DNA of 64,000 nucleotides from Macrostomum lignano (lineage: Eukaryota): assembly GCA_002269645.1 (NCBI GenBank), contig NIVC01002066.1, positions 124,001-188,000 on the forward strand. Direction: 5' to 3'. How positions within the stretch are numbered: the first letter of the stretch is position 1; every line of letters begins with the position of its first letter. The translations under genes were made by a program, and so were the position numbers. The notes beneath the pieces were generated by a model. It made no database searches and was not told the DNA's origin. It was given only the letters and a program-made list of their open reading frames with translations. Of this stretch, positions 10,197 to 62,804 are shown piece after piece.

Positions 10197-11077
10197 TCAA
10201 CCTCTACGCCGACAATTTTTCCGCTTGCACGACTTGTTGTGTGGGTTGTACGCGCAGCCGTAGGCGCACAGGTACTTGCCGGCGCAGTTGCCACCGTTTC
10301 TGCCGTACCTGTTGGCCACTTGGTCCGCTGCAGAGGAACTTTTCTTTTCACTCTGGCACAACTCGCGACAGTCGCTGCAAATTGGGGAAATTTGGGGATA
10401 ATTTATCTGGACAGCTTAATCAAGCTTCCACGAATAAAAGCAACCGGATTCCCTCTCATTGCTTGGATCAAAGTGCACAGTTGGTTCAAACCTATTTCAA
10501 AACTGATTTGAACAATACTTGAATGACTAATTGCTAAAGCTACGAGTACCAAGCGGTGATATAGACCCGATCTTAAAAGATCGGCCACATACGCTATAAA
10601 CCAATACATTGATCAAGCTGACATATTTTGTCAGCTGAGCGTACGCTCACACAGAGTGTGCACAGCGGCCCTGACTTAATCGTCAAACATGTCCACTCTC
10701 TGTGCTATGGTGTTGGATTAAATTGAATTAGACAGCTCACAGAATCGAATCAGAGATCGTTAAAAAGCTGCGCATTACCTGATAGCCTTAGCAATCAATC
10801 GATTTTTCAGCACATTGGCACCGCAGTGGTGCACCGCATTGTAGTTGCCCATGCAGTGAAAATATTTATCGCACTTCTTGCAGTTGGCTGAGACCATGTC
10901 TTTGTAGGCCTGAATCATTTTCCAGGCGGGGCAGCTGCTGGCAATCAAGCTGGGTCCAATTGATCGCGCCAAACGCGCTGGGCATCTGAAAATGCATCCG
11001 TAAAAGTCAAAGGCAGAGGACTGACCACACGAGACGGTCAAAAGAAGAACCACGGATGCTGCAAAGGCCAGCTTCAT
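10197..11077 (-). CDS. Cysteine-rich serum amyloid A (SAA)-like secreted protein, 158 aa, 2 coding exons
   Basis: Exon 1 11077-10779 and exon 2 10374-10197, joined by a GT..AG phase-2 intron. Signal peptide MKLAFAASVVLLLTVSCGQS. SAA motifs AYKDMVSAN..CDKYFHCMGNYNAV and AISDCRE...ADQVANRYGRNGG (compare human DMREAN..SDKYFHARGNYDAA, ISDARE, ADQAANEWGRSG). Confidence 0.88.
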
Positions 11078-11564
11078 ATCTCTGCAAGATTAGCTAATAA
11101 GTTTGATTGAGTATAGCAACGTAGGTCCTACAACACCAGCACTTTATGATACAAGACGATGGCTTTTAACCACATCTAGCAGGAGCTATTTATACTCAAT
11201 TTTTAAGCCAACGAAAAGCTGAATATTGTAGAATAGCTACTGACATATCTCGGAGATGTAGCTCTCTTTTAATACATTCTTTCCCGGATTTGTCAAAGAG
11301 ATGCTGCATTCAAAGAGATGTGCGTTCGAATGAAGGATATGAAAACCGCTGCTTATAGATCTATATAGCTCTATAGCTACCACACAAGCCTGCTGTTTAC
11401 TTCATTGTCTGAAGCAATTCTATTTATGAGAGCAGTTCTATTTTATGAAAACTTGCGCTGCAATTATACTGTGTAGGGTGAAACTCAAATGTAGAGTTGA
11501 GCGGTCAGGTCACAGTCTAAAATAAAAGCTCTAATTTCTAGCATAATGCATTGCAGTCCGTCTG

Positions 11565-12020
11565 TCCAACTATCTGTCTGTCTGTCTGTCTGTCTGTCTG
11601 TCTGTCTGTCTGTCTGTCTGTCTGTCTGTCTGTCTGTCTGTCTGTCTGTCTGTCTGTCTGTCTGTCTGTCTGTTCTGTTTGTCTGTTTTAGTGTCTGTCT
11701 GTCTGTCTGTCTGTCTGTCTGTCTGTCTCTCTGTCTGTCTGTCTGTCTGTCTGTCTGTCTGTCTGTCTGTCTGTCAGTCTGTCTGTCTGTCTGTCTGTCT
11801 GTCTGTTCTGTTTGTCTGTTTTAGTGTCTGTCTGTCTGTCTGTCTGTCTGTCTGTCTGTCTGTCTGTCTGTCTGTCTGTCTGTCTGTCTGTCTGTCTGTC
11901 TGTCTGTCTGTCTGTCTGTCTGTCTGTCTGTCTGTCCTGTCTGTCTGTCTGTCTGTCTGTCTGTCTGTCTGTCTGTCTGTCTGTCTGTCTGTCTGTCTGT
12001 CTGTCTGTCTGTTTGTCTGC
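11565..12020. repeat. (TCTG)n / (GACA)n tetranucleotide microsatellite, possibly within a DINE/Helentron-like element
   Basis: About 110 units directly visible, preceded by GTCCGTCTGTCC. The (LSVC)n and (QTDR)n ORFs are artefacts. Confidence 0.95.
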
Positions 12021-12401
12021 TTCAATTTTCAATTCTTAGCGCACAGCTTTTATATAAAAATTTACACTTCAGCTCTGCCTGAAAGGCCAAAAATACCAAC
12101 TGGGGAATAGGTCGGGATAGACGCAATTTAGAAAAAAATACTAGCGTATATAAAGCTAAACCATGCGGATGTCAGCTATAAACTAAAAATCGACTGGAAT
12201 TATCCTCGCCATTGCTACTGAATAGACAGCCATTTCTTTTTTCTATTTATAGCATCCACTGTACGGGTGCAGTGCTGCCGTACAAGACTGTACTGTCCAA
12301 TTAAGTACACTACTTGGATGGAACTGAGTACAATAATGGGGTACCACTCTGAATTCTATTGGGCTCACTCTGTGTGGCTGGAATCTTTGCAAGCCATCAT
12401 C

Positions 12402-60602: not shown

Positions 60603-61530
60603 TGTCACGGAAACCTGTAGAGTGTGCTACCTCCCGTTAAAAAGGTAAAAAGAAGTTAATCGTAGAATGCTACTATAAGTAAGTAAGTACACACATGTGC
60701 ACCTAAATTTTGAATGAACCACGCTACCAGGAAAAGATGTTACCAGAAAAATACGCCATGAGCCATTTTTCCCTTTTAGCGCAACACGTGAATTGTAATG
60801 ATATTATTTTGGACCGAAAAACGCCTATAAATACAAGCGGTCCGAAGCGGACCAGGAGCCAACTCTCGACGAGAGGAGAAGCTCCGAAGAGGAAGCCTTA
60901 GGAGGACTTCCTGATCAACCAAGTCAATCGAGACTCGGTCGAGTCGTAGCGGTAAGCCTTCCTTATTTGCGCCCGTTGTGTTAGAGACGTCTCGCTCAAG
61001 TCTATTGAGACTTGAGTTTATTTGAGTCTGTTGAGACTCTTGAGTCTGTTTAGACTCCACTGGTTGCAGTCTCCAGAAGGACTGCCCCTGAGAGATCTTA
61101 GGAGACTATCAGTGGTTTCCGGAGCTATACCTAGAGTGCATATAAGCACTGCTAGAAGAAGGAGGCTTAATTCAAACCGCAGTTCGGCGCAGGGTACCCA
61201 TTGTTGATACGAGGCCTCTGATTGGTCCTGACTGAAGATACCGGCCGGAGGAACTTATCGGAAGTACAAGAGGAACCAGGACCAGAGCAACTGAAGAATC
61301 AAGGCGCCTGATCTACGAGATCACAAAGAGATCCAAGCGAGATCTACTCGAAGACTACAGAAGAGATATCTCCAAGCGACGTCAAGGTAAGAAGTATCTT
61401 TAATTGATAACTGGGTTGCCTAGCAAAGTAGCTAGAAGTGATTGTTCCTTGATTATCGAAAGTCAGGTAATAAGGAACACATCAAACCCAGCCAAAACAG
61501 GAGCCGCTGGCGCCCAGAAAATAAAGAACG
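60603..61530 (+). mobile_element. Possible LTR-retrotransposon LTR/leader remnant
   Basis: Starts TGTCACGG, has a TATA box CTATAAATAC at about 60825 and a PBS-like TGGCGCCCAG at about 61508. No TSD or second LTR found. Confidence 0.3.
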
Positions 61531-62089
61531 ATGGCCGCAACGTGGCTTACAAATCTAAATTTAAGTTAGGACAATAAGCTGTTTTTTTTAAATACACTTG
61601 TAGATTTCCCAGAATTTCTTTAGTCAGACAGCTACATGCATATACGACTTTTTTAAATGCACCAAACGCTTCTCTTGAGCATATCCGTTTAGGGAATAAA
61701 ATCAGAGATATTCATTCCGCCTCTATCCTGCTTCTCTGCACATACGGAATCGAATTTTTTAAGTTTTACCAATGTGAAGACTTGCAGTTTTTGCTTCAAA
61801 AAGCTGAACGATTCCAAGCCGTCTAGTAAAACATCGAGCGGAAGTGTCACTATAGTTTTGAATGCATGTGGCACAAAAGAACAATGTAAAGCAACGGATG
61901 CTTGAGTCAAATATGTTGCTTTTGCAGTAGAATAATAAATAGTTCAAGGTCTTAAATTTTATTTGTCTCAAAACGAGGCATTGACGCGCTAAAACCAGGT
62001 CGTTACAATTCGCTTGAGTCCATGCTCAGCTCACCAAATGAGCCAGTCGGTCACCGCACCGCTCGAGCTCAGCCACGCACGAACAGAGT

Positions 62090-62804
62090 CTACTCGGGCC
62101 CGCTCAGGTTGCCAGGCGGGTACACGAACTCCAGCAGGTGGCAGGCGAGCTCCTGTCGGGAGAAAACGGCGGCCCGGCAGTCGGCTCTGGCGCTGCACCA
62201 GAGCAGGCAGTCCTCGACGGACTGGGCAGCGACAGGCCAGACGGAAGTGGCACCGGATGTCACGGGAGGGCTGGACGGCTTCACTACCGTGTAGGTGTTG
62301 CGGTCCGAAACTGAAGTTGAATGAAAGTGCATAGTCTCATACTTCCATAATGACAGCCGCTACTGAGCAGTAACAGAAAATTACAAAAGTACCTGAGTAG
62401 CTCAGTGAGAACACAGAATTGCAATAGTAACCGCCACATTTTTGCTGTTGGTTTCCGGAGCAAGCATTGCTGCAGTTGCCTTCACCCACCAAGCCATGGG
62501 ATCCGTACGAGTTGCCGCAGTAGCACTCTTTGCCGTGCTGCACACCGAAGTAGGCGAATTTTCCCGCCGAGCAGACGCCGCTGCACAGCTCGTGCGACAT
62601 CTCAGTGCTTAGCCATACTCGATCTTCACTAACGACATCGAATCCGCCAAGTTTTGTGAGCCCTCTGAGTCCGTTTAAGTCCCTGAGTGACCCATGGTCT
62701 TTATAGCAGCCCAGGTAGGAGAAGCGGGCGAGTCTGCAGGTGACGCAAGTCAGCAGGAGGGCAGCGCAGAGCAGAACGGGCAGAGCGGCTGCTGGACGGA
62801 ACAT
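62090..62804 (-). CDS. Secreted WSC + PAN protein, copy F (last 7 residues lost through TGG to TAG)
   Basis: Exon 1 62804-62393 and exon 2 62310-62090. All core cysteines present. It ends ...LSGPE* instead of ...GPEWTLFVRG* (ancestral stop at 62069). Confidence 0.8.

What the first reader, a model, noticed from the sequence alone, without database searches (positions are those of the whole stretch)
10197..62804. Candidate clustered innate-immune system: ANK-cGLR, ANK-caspase, SAA-like protein and two amplified glycan-binding-type receptor families
Every recognisable host gene in the 64 kb belongs to an immunity-type family. There is a cyclic-dinucleotide-synthase-like enzyme and a caspase, both with N-terminal ankyrin arrays, plus an acute-phase SAA-like protein, secreted WSC proteins (a domain associated with beta-glucan/glycan binding) and membrane C-type-lectin-like proteins. 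No housekeeping gene is seen. A nucleotidyltransferase sensor next to a protease effector recalls the logic of bacterial CBASS (CD-NTase plus effector), here in a metazoan locus. The genes are seen directly; co-function is inference, and clustering could simply reflect a repeat-rich birth-and-death region.
Basis: partly seen in the sequence, partly recalled or inferred. Interest (0 to 1): 0.8.

Follow-up and report, generated by a model that had tools for sequence, protein, structure and literature searches.

The report
Flatworm immune-type gene cluster, mostly decaying
This stretch of the flatworm Macrostomum lignano genome really does hold a cGAS-like enzyme, a caspase, a serum-amyloid-A-like gene and two amplified receptor-like families side by side, but the two key genes are broken in this copy and their adjacency is not repeated elsewhere, so it looks like an ordinary fast-turnover gene neighbourhood rather than a wired-together immune system.

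Summary
The window is Macrostomum lignano contig NIVC01002066.1, positions 124001-188000 (100% identity over 7.7 kb).

- an SAA-like gene
- an ANK + Mab21/cGLR gene
- an ANK + caspase gene
- four WSC-PAN genes plus two remnants
- three copies of a Cys-rich membrane protein

The "C-type-lectin-like" label for that last family has no statistical support.

The system reading is not supported:
- **cGLR gene.** It carries a 1-nt deletion and frameshift. A 98-100% identical copy on another contig is intact.
- **Caspase gene.** It has an in-frame TAA before the catalytic Cys. The homeologous locus has TTA there.
- **Other copies.** One WSC copy and one membrane-protein copy carry nonsense codons.
- **Annotation.** Over the 28.6 kb of the window I could check, only the SAA gene is called in the NCBI annotation.
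- **Other loci.** Six other ANK-cGLR loci and two other ANK-caspase loci show no cGLR-caspase adjacency. Their neighbours are housekeeping genes.
- **Homeolog.** The older homeologous locus keeps SAA but lacks the cGLR.
- **Caspase domains.** The caspase has no nucleotide-sensing domain.

The ANK-cGLR family is a large Macrostomum expansion that Li et al. 2023 already catalogued. The best reading is a birth-and-death region. Interest is low to moderate.

The parts
10197..11077 (-). SAA-like gene. Two exons (11077-10779, 10374-10197). Secreted, Cys-rich, 158 aa.
   Evidence: Pfam SAA E=2.9e-16. Splice sites were read from the DNA. The product is identical to PAA61142.1/PAA91505.1. It is the only gene called in window 197-21077.
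11573..12019 (.). (TCTG)n microsatellite between SAA and the cGLR gene. It marks where homology with the homeologous locus ends.
   Evidence: TRF. The alignment of the window to L011 stops at 12019.
12402..15317 (+). ANK-repeat + Mab21/cGLR-type nucleotidyltransferase gene with a conserved about 250-aa C-terminal extension. Exon 1 is 12402-13851 and exon 2 is 13937-15317. A 1-nt deletion between 14244 and 14245 creates a stop at 14248-14250.
   Evidence: Pfam. DNA read. Alignment to M. lignano homologues. Motif check. PDB profile hits to Sp-cGLR1, cGAS and MAB21L1. Foldseek. The intact paralogous copy is in L010.
15715..18512 (.). 15-bp minisatellite arrays (GGATCCAGTTTGAGG) at 15715-16830 and 18027-18512. 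Related arrays lie at 20351-20988 and 56728-57337, next to WSC copies.
   Evidence: TRF. Self-BLAST.
19249..19980 (-). WSC-PAN gene copy A. Exons 19980-19569 and 19490-19249. Open reading frame with a signal peptide.
   Evidence: Pfam WSC 5.7e-14. Splice junction.
21498..22265 (-). WSC-PAN copy B, a probable pseudogene. It has an in-frame stop at 22176-22178 after the signal peptide.
   Evidence: Pfam WSC 4.1e-12. Translation.
24933..25595 (-). WSC-PAN copy C. Single exon because the intron has been deleted. Open reading frame.
   Evidence: Pfam WSC 1.5e-15 and PAN_1 1.5e-06. Junction comparison.
26134..27442 (+). Crypton-like tyrosine-recombinase transposon ORFs.
   Evidence: Pfam DUF3504 4.6e-10 and Phage_integrase 1.6e-04.
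29888..33219 (+). ANK-repeat + caspase gene. Exons 29888-30460, 30786-31297, 32383-32722 and 32800-33219. Catalytic His and QACRG are present. An in-frame TAA sits at 32806-32808, upstream of the catalytic Cys.
   Evidence: Pfam. Junctions. Model. The homeolog has TTA at that codon. Paralogues L012 and L013 have an intron at the same position.
37710..39009 (+). Cys-rich type I membrane protein, copy 1. Exons 37710-38023 and 38628-39009. Open reading frame. CTLD-like by motif only.
   Evidence: Model. 85-89% identical to M. lignano P0179-P0181. No Pfam or PDB support.
39910..40620 (+). Cys-rich membrane protein, copy 2, a probable pseudogene. A stop replaces the conserved Cys in exon 1.
   Evidence: Translation.
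46984..47930 (+). Cys-rich type I membrane protein, copy 3. Exons 46984-47297 and 47561-47930. Open reading frame.
   Evidence: Model. Alignment A3.
49836..55482 (-). DIRS-like retroelement: gag with SAP domain, RT, tyrosine recombinase and terminal repeats. A THAP ORF lies at 50784-51272.
   Evidence: Pfam. A 99.7% identical copy is present in L007.
55925..58476 (-). Two degenerate WSC(-PAN) remnants, at 55925-56089 and 58189-58476.
   Evidence: ORF translations. BLAST to other copies.
62090..62804 (-). WSC-PAN copy D. Exons 62804-62393 and 62310 to about 62090. The frame is open but ends 7 aa earlier than the other copies.
   Evidence: Pfam WSC 6.2e-13. Model. Not called in the NCBI annotation.

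Best explanation
The window is a fast-turnover (birth-and-death), repeat-rich segment of the partly duplicated Macrostomum lignano genome. Members of several lineage-expanded gene families have accumulated there by local duplication and rearrangement. They are an ANK-cGLR, an ANK-caspase, secreted WSC-PAN proteins, Cys-rich membrane proteins, and an annotated (presumably transcribed) SAA-like gene.

Inferred roles of the individual genes:
- **ANK-cGLR.** By family, it is a ligand-activated nucleotidyltransferase. The ANK array and the C-terminal helical extension would be the sensing or regulatory parts.
- **ANK-caspase.** An effector-type cysteine protease whose prodomain is an ANK array instead of a death-fold domain.
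- **WSC-PAN and SAA-like proteins.** Secreted binding or acute-phase-type proteins.

In this particular copy the cGLR is frameshifted and the caspase has a premature stop. One WSC copy and one membrane-protein copy are also dead. The genes are neighbours by duplication history, not parts of one wired pathway.

Shown: the gene content, the lesions, and the lack of recurrence of the linkage. Inferred: every biochemical and immune role.
For: **Identity of the locus.** 100% match to NIVC01002066.1.

**Tandem paralogues.** Copies are 77-90% identical and are interleaved with minisatellites and transposons. A DIRS copy is 99.7% identical to one at another locus.

**Lesions.**
- A 1-nt deletion in the cGLR, against an intact 98-100% identical copy in L010.
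- TAA in the caspase against TTA in L011.
- Nonsense codons in WSC-B and membrane-protein copy 2.
- Two WSC remnants.

**Annotation.** Only SAA is called in window 197-21077, and nothing is called in 56294-64000. Exact look-ups of the WSC and membrane-protein models found nothing. No near-identical cGLR or caspase protein exists in the database.

**No recurrence of the linkage.**
- Six other ANK-cGLR loci have M28 peptidase, profilin, MRPL55, ATP-synthase C, HLH, a retroelement or another ANK protein as neighbours. tblastn finds no caspase, SAA or membrane protein there.
- Two ANK-caspase loci sit next to a kinesin and have no cGLR, WSC or SAA.
- The homeolog L011 has SAA plus an inverted, 5'-truncated caspase remnant and no cGLR.

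**Family size.** There are 86 representatives at E<1e-30 after clustering at 50% identity. All 20 sampled are M. lignano.
Against: - Five immune-type families in 53 kb with no other recognisable gene is still a striking density. I could not run a genome-wide permutation test.
- SAA, caspase, WSC and membrane-protein genes are collinear over about 60 kb in the homeologous contig. Part of the neighbourhood is therefore retained after duplication.
- The frameshift and the stop codon could be assembly errors or allele-specific. An intact cGLR copy exists in the near-identical locus L010.
- Absence from a transcript-based annotation would also be expected for genes that are induced only on infection.
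- Only +-10 kb around each paralogous locus could be inspected.
Confidence: 0.7

Rival explanations
1. A co-functional innate-immune module. The ANK-cGLR senses a ligand and makes a nucleotide signal, which directly or indirectly activates the neighbouring ANK-caspase. SAA, WSC-PAN and the membrane proteins act as co-regulated recognition or effector components. This is the CBASS-like sensor-next-to-effector logic in an animal genome.
For: - The genes are physically adjacent, and nothing else recognisable lies in the window.
- The cGLR has a complete catalytic motif and belongs to a family that Li et al. 2023 accepted as cGLRs.
- The caspase retains its catalytic His and Cys.
- A cGLR-STING-FADD-caspase link is known in Drosophila (PMC13144350 abstract).
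Against: - Both key genes are interrupted here.
- The caspase has no SAVED, STING, TIR or other nucleotide-binding module, only ANK.
- The two ANK arrays are only generically similar.
- The adjacency is absent at 6 ANK-cGLR and 2 ANK-caspase loci.
- The homeolog lacks the cGLR.
- No expression data are available.
Confidence: 0.07
2. An 'immune island' without direct coupling. The lesions are assembly errors or are confined to one of several near-identical copies. The genes are intact, independently acting, infection-inducible defence genes. They sit together because such regions tolerate duplication and may share chromatin-level regulation.
For: - The L010 copy of the cGLR is intact and 98-100% identical.
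- The cGLR lesion is a single-base deletion next to a T-run, which is a typical long-read error context.
- Apart from the single lesions, both ORFs are long and open with conserved motifs.
- SAA is annotated and exists in three copies.
- Partial collinearity is seen in the homeolog.
Against: - The caspase lesion is a substitution (TTA to TAA), which is less typical of assembly error.
- Two further family members have nonsense codons and two are remnants.
- Neither the window copy nor the intact L010 copy of the cGLR is called in the annotation.
- An immune role is untested for every gene here.
Confidence: 0.2

Closest known systems
Macrostomum lignano ANK-cGLRs catalogued by Li et al. 2023 (for example PAA86972.1, PAA45980.1, PAA68676.1; PMC9980059, Tables S2/S3)
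   Same: Same species and same architecture: an N-terminal ANK array, an NTase core with GS...DxD...D, a Mab21 C-terminal domain and a long conserved C-terminal extension. The sequence around the frameshift site aligns directly (VIVKHLIKQVLAKR against VTVKHFLKNVVSKQ).
   Different: The window gene is an unannotated paralogue, only 31-39% identical to any catalogued member. It is frameshifted in this copy. No enzymatic activity for the M. lignano members appears in the text I could read.
Metazoan cGLR-STING signalling (cGAS, Drosophila cGLR1/2, Sp-cGLR1)
   Same: Homologous Mab21/cGAS C-terminal domain (PDB profile E 1.5e-07 to 4e-05). The top Foldseek matches are Sp-cGLR1, MAB21L1, MB21D2 and cGAS. 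The catalytic motif is complete.
   Different: The NTase lobe is too divergent for Pfam Mab-21 to detect it. There are extra ANK and C-terminal domains. No STING or other receptor is visible in the window. The ligand and product are unknown.
Bacterial CBASS operons (CD-NTase plus an adjacent nucleotide-activated effector)
   Same: A cGAS/DncV-like nucleotidyltransferase-family gene lies within 15 kb of a potential cell-death protease.
   Different: No operon, and the two genes are separated by a WSC array and a transposon. The effector lacks a nucleotide-sensing domain. The adjacency is not conserved at paralogous loci.
Birth-and-death multigene regions of invertebrate immune-type genes (tandem lectin or receptor arrays with pseudogenes)
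   Same: Tandem copies 77-90% identical, nonsense-bearing copies and fragments, interspersed transposons and minisatellites, and structural differences between homeologs.
   Different: Several unrelated families are mixed in one region, rather than a single tandem family.

Membership tests
cGLR (cGAS-like receptor; definition of Li et al. 2023) | NTase motif h[QT]GS-X8-20-[DE]h[DE]h-X50-90-h[DE]h | tested here: met
   The window sequence has LTGS-X20-DLDF-X55-TDY. The definition was taken from PMC9980059. The residue before the third acidic position is T rather than a classic hydrophobic residue. GS, DxD and D are invariant across the family alignment.
cGLR (cGAS-like receptor; definition of Li et al. 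2023) | Homology of the C-terminal helical (Mab21) domain to cGAS/Mab21 | tested here: met
   Pfam Mab-21_C E=2.6e-08, above the curated cut-off. Profile against PDB: Sp-cGLR1 1.5e-07, cGAS about 1e-06, MAB21L1 3.8e-05.
cGLR (cGAS-like receptor; definition of Li et al. 2023) | Bilobed cGAS-like fold | tested here: inconclusive
   The AF2 model of homologue P0001 has mean pLDDT 56.6, and the NTase lobe is below 50. The top Foldseek hits are all cGLR, MAB21L1, MB21D2 or cGAS, but with TM about 0.38.
cGLR (cGAS-like receptor; definition of Li et al. 2023) | Uninterrupted coding sequence | tested here: not met
   A 1-nt deletion between 14244 and 14245 gives a stop at 14248-14250. The copy in L010 is intact.
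cGLR (cGAS-like receptor; definition of Li et al. 2023) | Ligand-dependent synthesis of a nucleotide second messenger | not testable with these tools
   Needs biochemistry.
Caspase (peptidase C14A) | Caspase domain with catalytic His and QACxG Cys | tested here: met
   Pfam Peptidase_C14 1.6e-16. THG and QACRG are present in the model. 44-46% identical to M. lignano caspases.
Caspase (peptidase C14A) | Uninterrupted coding sequence through the catalytic Cys | tested here: not met
   In-frame TAA at 32806-32808, three codons after the last acceptor site. The homeolog has TTA. No canonical alternative splice restores the frame.
Serum amyloid A | SAA domain | tested here: met
   Pfam SAA E=2.9e-16, 60 bits against a cut-off of 30.8. 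UniProt names the cluster representative 'Serum amyloid A protein'.
WSC / PAN domain proteins | WSC domain, with a PAN/apple domain | tested here: met
   WSC E from 4e-12 to 1.5e-15 for four copies. PAN_1 1.5e-06 for copy C.
C-type lectin-like domain (CTLD) | Statistically detectable CTLD (Pfam Lectin_C, or a solved-structure relative) | tested here: not met
   No Lectin_C hit at E<=1. No PDB sequence hit at E<=10. Database homologues carry no Pfam domain.
C-type lectin-like domain (CTLD) | CTLD fold | tested here: inconclusive
   AF2 model mean pLDDT 39.3, which is not usable. Only the motif pattern resembles a short CTLD without the long loop: CPPGW...C, A..FC, LAS, LWVSG, C...C....C. That pattern is my own reading of the sequence.
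CBASS-like sensor-effector module | Effector carries a nucleotide-signal-sensing domain | tested here: not met
   Only Ank and Peptidase_C14 were found in the caspase gene.
CBASS-like sensor-effector module | Sensor-effector adjacency conserved across loci | tested here: not met
   0 of 6 ANK-cGLR loci and 0 of 2 ANK-caspase loci show it within +-10 kb. The homeolog lacks the cGLR.
Birth-and-death multigene region | Tandem paralogues with pseudogenes and fragments, transposons, and structural variation between duplicates | tested here: met

The most novel reading that the evidence does not exclude
Macrostomum may have built a lineage-specific defence repertoire in which ANK-repeat arrays serve as interchangeable sensor modules. 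These would be fused to different outputs, such as cGLR nucleotidyltransferases (at least 85 divergent clusters) and caspases (at least 4 clusters). On this reading, loci like this one are immune islands where such ANK-X genes, SAA and secreted binding proteins are co-regulated, and the intact sister locus on NIVC01000085.1 is the working copy.
Probability: 0.1. Interest if true: 0.7.

Novelty: new member of a known kind. Interest (0 to 1): 0.25.

Why it matters
If the cluster were a working unit, it would be the first animal example of CBASS-like sensor-next-to-effector genome organisation. It would also link cGLR signalling directly to a caspase.

The evidence here points instead to neighbouring members of expanded families, several of them decaying. 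The practical value is more modest:
- It documents unannotated paralogues of the large M. lignano ANK-cGLR and ANK-caspase families.
- It shows that the transcript-based annotation misses them.
- It supplies a pair of near-identical loci, one with an intact and one with a frameshifted cGLR, that could be used to study turnover of these genes.

Tried and rejected
1. I tried to predict the structure of the frameshift-corrected window cGLR. I modelled homologue P0001 instead, with window fragments in the alignment. Confidence was low, so the Foldseek result is only supportive.
2. I modelled the structure of the CTLD-like protein. Mean pLDDT was 39, so I did not run Foldseek on it.
3. I looked for an alternative splice that rescues the caspase frame. 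The only option is a very weak GTTTCA donor, and I rejected it. The homeolog's TTA shows that the TAA is a point change.
4. I considered a 23-nt 'intron' to rescue the cGLR frame and rejected it. Homologues read straight through the site, and L010 has one extra base.
5. I first thought the window came from a different flatworm, because the best cGLR and caspase identities were only 37-46%. A 100% DNA match to the M. lignano assembly disproved this.
6. I tested whether the two ANK arrays are specifically related. They share only generic ANK similarity.
7. I searched the literature for STING, SAA or immune-expression data in M. lignano. Nothing usable turned up.
8. I scanned the remaining ORFs for other gene families and found none.

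
Full report
**Source of the window.** Composition, ORFs and repeats show repeat-rich eukaryotic DNA. A locus fetched for a homologous protein, L008, matches window 56294-64000 at 100% identity over 7,707 bp. A second locus, fetched with the SAA protein (L009), is window 197-21077 in reverse. The window is therefore Macrostomum lignano assembly GCA_002269645.1, contig NIVC01002066.1, positions 124001-188000.

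**SAA-like gene (10197-11077, minus strand).**
- It has two exons with canonical GT-AG sites.
- It hits Pfam SAA at E=2.9e-16.
- My spliced 158-aa model is identical to the annotated proteins PAA61142.1 and PAA91505.1.

**ANK-cGLR gene (plus strand).**
- Exon 1 (12402-13851) encodes about 10 ankyrin repeats and the start of a nucleotidyltransferase core. Exon 2 (13937-15317) encodes the rest of the core, a Mab-21 C-terminal domain (Pfam 2.6e-08) and a conserved extension of about 250 aa.
- The motif LTGS-X20-DLDF-X55-TDY fits the cGLR definition of Li et al. 2023.
- A family profile hits Sp-cGLR1, cGAS and MAB21L1 in the PDB.
- A low-confidence AF2 model of a homologue matches only cGLR, cGAS and Mab21 structures.

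**ANK-caspase gene (29888-33219, plus strand).** It has four exons, ankyrin repeats, a caspase domain (Pfam 1.6e-16) and the catalytic motifs THG and QACRG.

**WSC-PAN genes (minus strand).** There are four genes and two remnants, forming two arrays at 19-26 kb and 56-63 kb.

**Cys-rich type I membrane proteins.** Three copies lie at 37.7-47.9 kb.

**Transposons.** There is a Crypton-like element, a DIRS-like element and a THAP ORF.

**No other genes found.** No other Pfam family turns up in the remaining ORFs.

**Corrections to the observation.**

*The 'C-type-lectin-like' label.* The Cys-rich membrane proteins give no Lectin_C hit even at E<=1 and no PDB sequence relative. Their database relatives, which are 85-89% identical M. 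lignano proteins, carry no Pfam domain. The AF2 model is unusable (pLDDT 39). The label therefore rests only on a cysteine and motif pattern.

*The cGLR frameshift.* Exon 2 changes reading frame at a site where all homologues read straight through. The sister locus L010 (NIVC01000085.1) is 98% identical over window 9869-21197. It reads CATCTTTTAAAG where the window reads CATTTTTAAAG, and its cGLR ORF is uninterrupted. The window copy therefore has a 1-nt deletion that creates a stop at 14248-14250.

*The caspase stop codon.* The last exon begins CCG AAA TAA TGC. The spacing to the conserved Cys-x-x-L-x-G-K-P-K motif equals that of the paralogues, and paralogous loci have the intron at the same position. 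The homeologous locus L011 reads TTA at that codon. The window copy therefore carries a nonsense mutation upstream of the catalytic cysteine.

*Other dead copies.* WSC copy B and membrane-protein copy 2 each carry a nonsense codon.

*Annotation.* The NCBI annotation, which as far as I recall is transcript-based, calls only SAA in window 197-21077 and nothing in 56294-64000. I could not inspect annotation calls for window 21078-56293. Exact look-ups of my WSC and membrane-protein models found nothing. The protein database holds no near-identical cGLR or caspase.

*Housekeeping genes.* A ribosomal protein S7e gene lies about 12 kb past the right end of the window.

**Is the linkage more than neighbourhood?**

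*Size of the cGLR family.* The ANK-cGLR family is a large Macrostomum expansion. An exhaustive profile search found 86 representatives at E<1e-30 after clustering at 50% identity, and all 20 that I looked up are M. lignano. The window protein is only 31-39% identical to any of them.

*Other ANK-cGLR loci.* I fetched six of them with +-10 kb of flank. Their neighbours are an M28 peptidase, profilin, MRPL55, ATP-synthase subunit C, an HLH protein, a retroelement, another ANK protein and unknowns. tblastn with the window's caspase, SAA and membrane protein finds nothing there. The WSC-PAN query gives only one weak PAN-like match.

*Other ANK-caspase loci.* Two other loci (PAA68165.1 and PAA93481.1) sit next to a kinesin. 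They have no cGLR, WSC, SAA or membrane-protein sequence.

*The older homeologous region.* Contig NIVC01000247.1 is collinear over about 60 kb for SAA, then WSC, then the membrane protein. Next to its SAA it has only an inverted, 5'-truncated caspase remnant with a 1.1-kb insertion in the last intron. It has no cGLR or WSC array. Homology with the window stops exactly at the (TCTG)n microsatellite at 12019.

*Domains of the caspase.* It has no domain that could read a nucleotide signal. The ANK arrays of the two proteins share only generic repeat similarity.

Function can only be inferred from family membership:
- The ANK-cGLR would be a ligand-activated nucleotidyltransferase.
- The ANK-caspase would be a protease with an ANK prodomain.
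- The WSC-PAN and SAA-like proteins would be secreted binding or acute-phase-type proteins.

None of these roles has been tested in flatworms, as far as I could find.

**Relation to the literature.**
- Li et al. [quoted passage not shown]
- Their supplementary tables list M. lignano ANK-cGLRs (PAA86972.1, PAA45980.1, PAA68676.1) and include them among the 140 proteins cloned for the biochemical screen.
- The family and its architecture are therefore already catalogued. The window gene is a new, unannotated and here interrupted paralogue.
- A cGLR-to-caspase connection is known in Drosophila, through STING and FADD rather than gene adjacency (PMC13144350 abstract).

**Limits.**
- I could inspect only +-10 kb around paralogous loci.
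- I could not run a genome-wide permutation test.
- I had no expression data.
- I could not check raw reads. The two lesions could be assembly errors or copy-specific, and the intact L010 cGLR shows that a working copy may exist.

These points keep a modest probability on an 'immune island' reading and a small one on true co-function.

Noticed in passing
L010 (NIVC01000085.1:718199-739078), aligned to window 9869-21197: A 98%-identical sister locus carries the same SAA, ANK-cGLR, minisatellite and WSC-A block. Its cGLR ORF is intact, yet the cGLR is not called as a gene there either. Relative to the window, L010 also has an insertion of about 6 kb (L010 12457-18422) that holds a called 599-aa gene with no Pfam domain.
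   Followed up: partly
L011 (NIVC01000247.1:51030-71917) against window 27810-33296: In the older homeolog the caspase block is inverted relative to SAA. It lacks the ANK exons and has a 1.1-kb insertion in the last intron, made of sequence related to window 56050-56561 and 60823-61484. The cGLR, WSC and Crypton block (window 12.0-27.8 kb) is absent.
   Followed up: partly
window 49836-55482; L007 1-3813: A DIRS-like retroelement (SAP-domain gag, RT, tyrosine recombinase) has a 99.7%-identical copy at the homeologous locus, whose flanks are only about 94% identical. This suggests recent activity or gene conversion. A THAP-domain ORF (50784-51272) lies inside its span.
   Followed up: no
window 15715-16830, 18027-18512, 20351-20988, 56728-57337: Related 15-20-bp minisatellite arrays (core GGATCCAGTTTG) sit beside the cGLR 3' end and the WSC copies. 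They seem to travel with the duplicated WSC units. A similar array is also present at L008 430-1050.
   Followed up: no
window 35658-35970 (tRNA-like hit at 35899-35968, minus strand): Rfam tRNA hit (34.6 bits) that ARAGORN does not call. The surrounding 310 bp has three copies, 76-86% identical, in L001. It is probably a tRNA-derived SINE.
   Followed up: partly
L001 16329-16541 and 17836-18330: Unannotated ORFs lie 3-5 kb downstream of ANK-cGLR P0001, among the closest annotated homologues of the window's cGLR. One has a PAN/apple-like pattern and the other a fibrinogen-C-terminal-like pattern (FSTKDQDND...NYCLTCNPNG). I identified both by eye and did not run Pfam on them.
   Followed up: no
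window 24933-25595 against the other WSC copies: WSC-PAN copy C has lost the roughly 80-nt intron that the other copies have between the WSC and PAN parts. An in-frame 15-nt remnant remains (PGTQDTQ).
   Followed up: partly
window-equivalent 66294-67356 and about 76.4 kb (L008 10001-11063 and 20092-21063): Just beyond the right end of the window lie a fourth, annotated copy of the Cys-rich membrane protein (P0180) and a ribosomal protein S7e gene.
   Followed up: partly
window 36463-36980 and 45659-46155: Two very regular tandem arrays with no coding signal, both 97% matches: a 43-bp unit x12 and a 13-bp unit x39.
   Followed up: no
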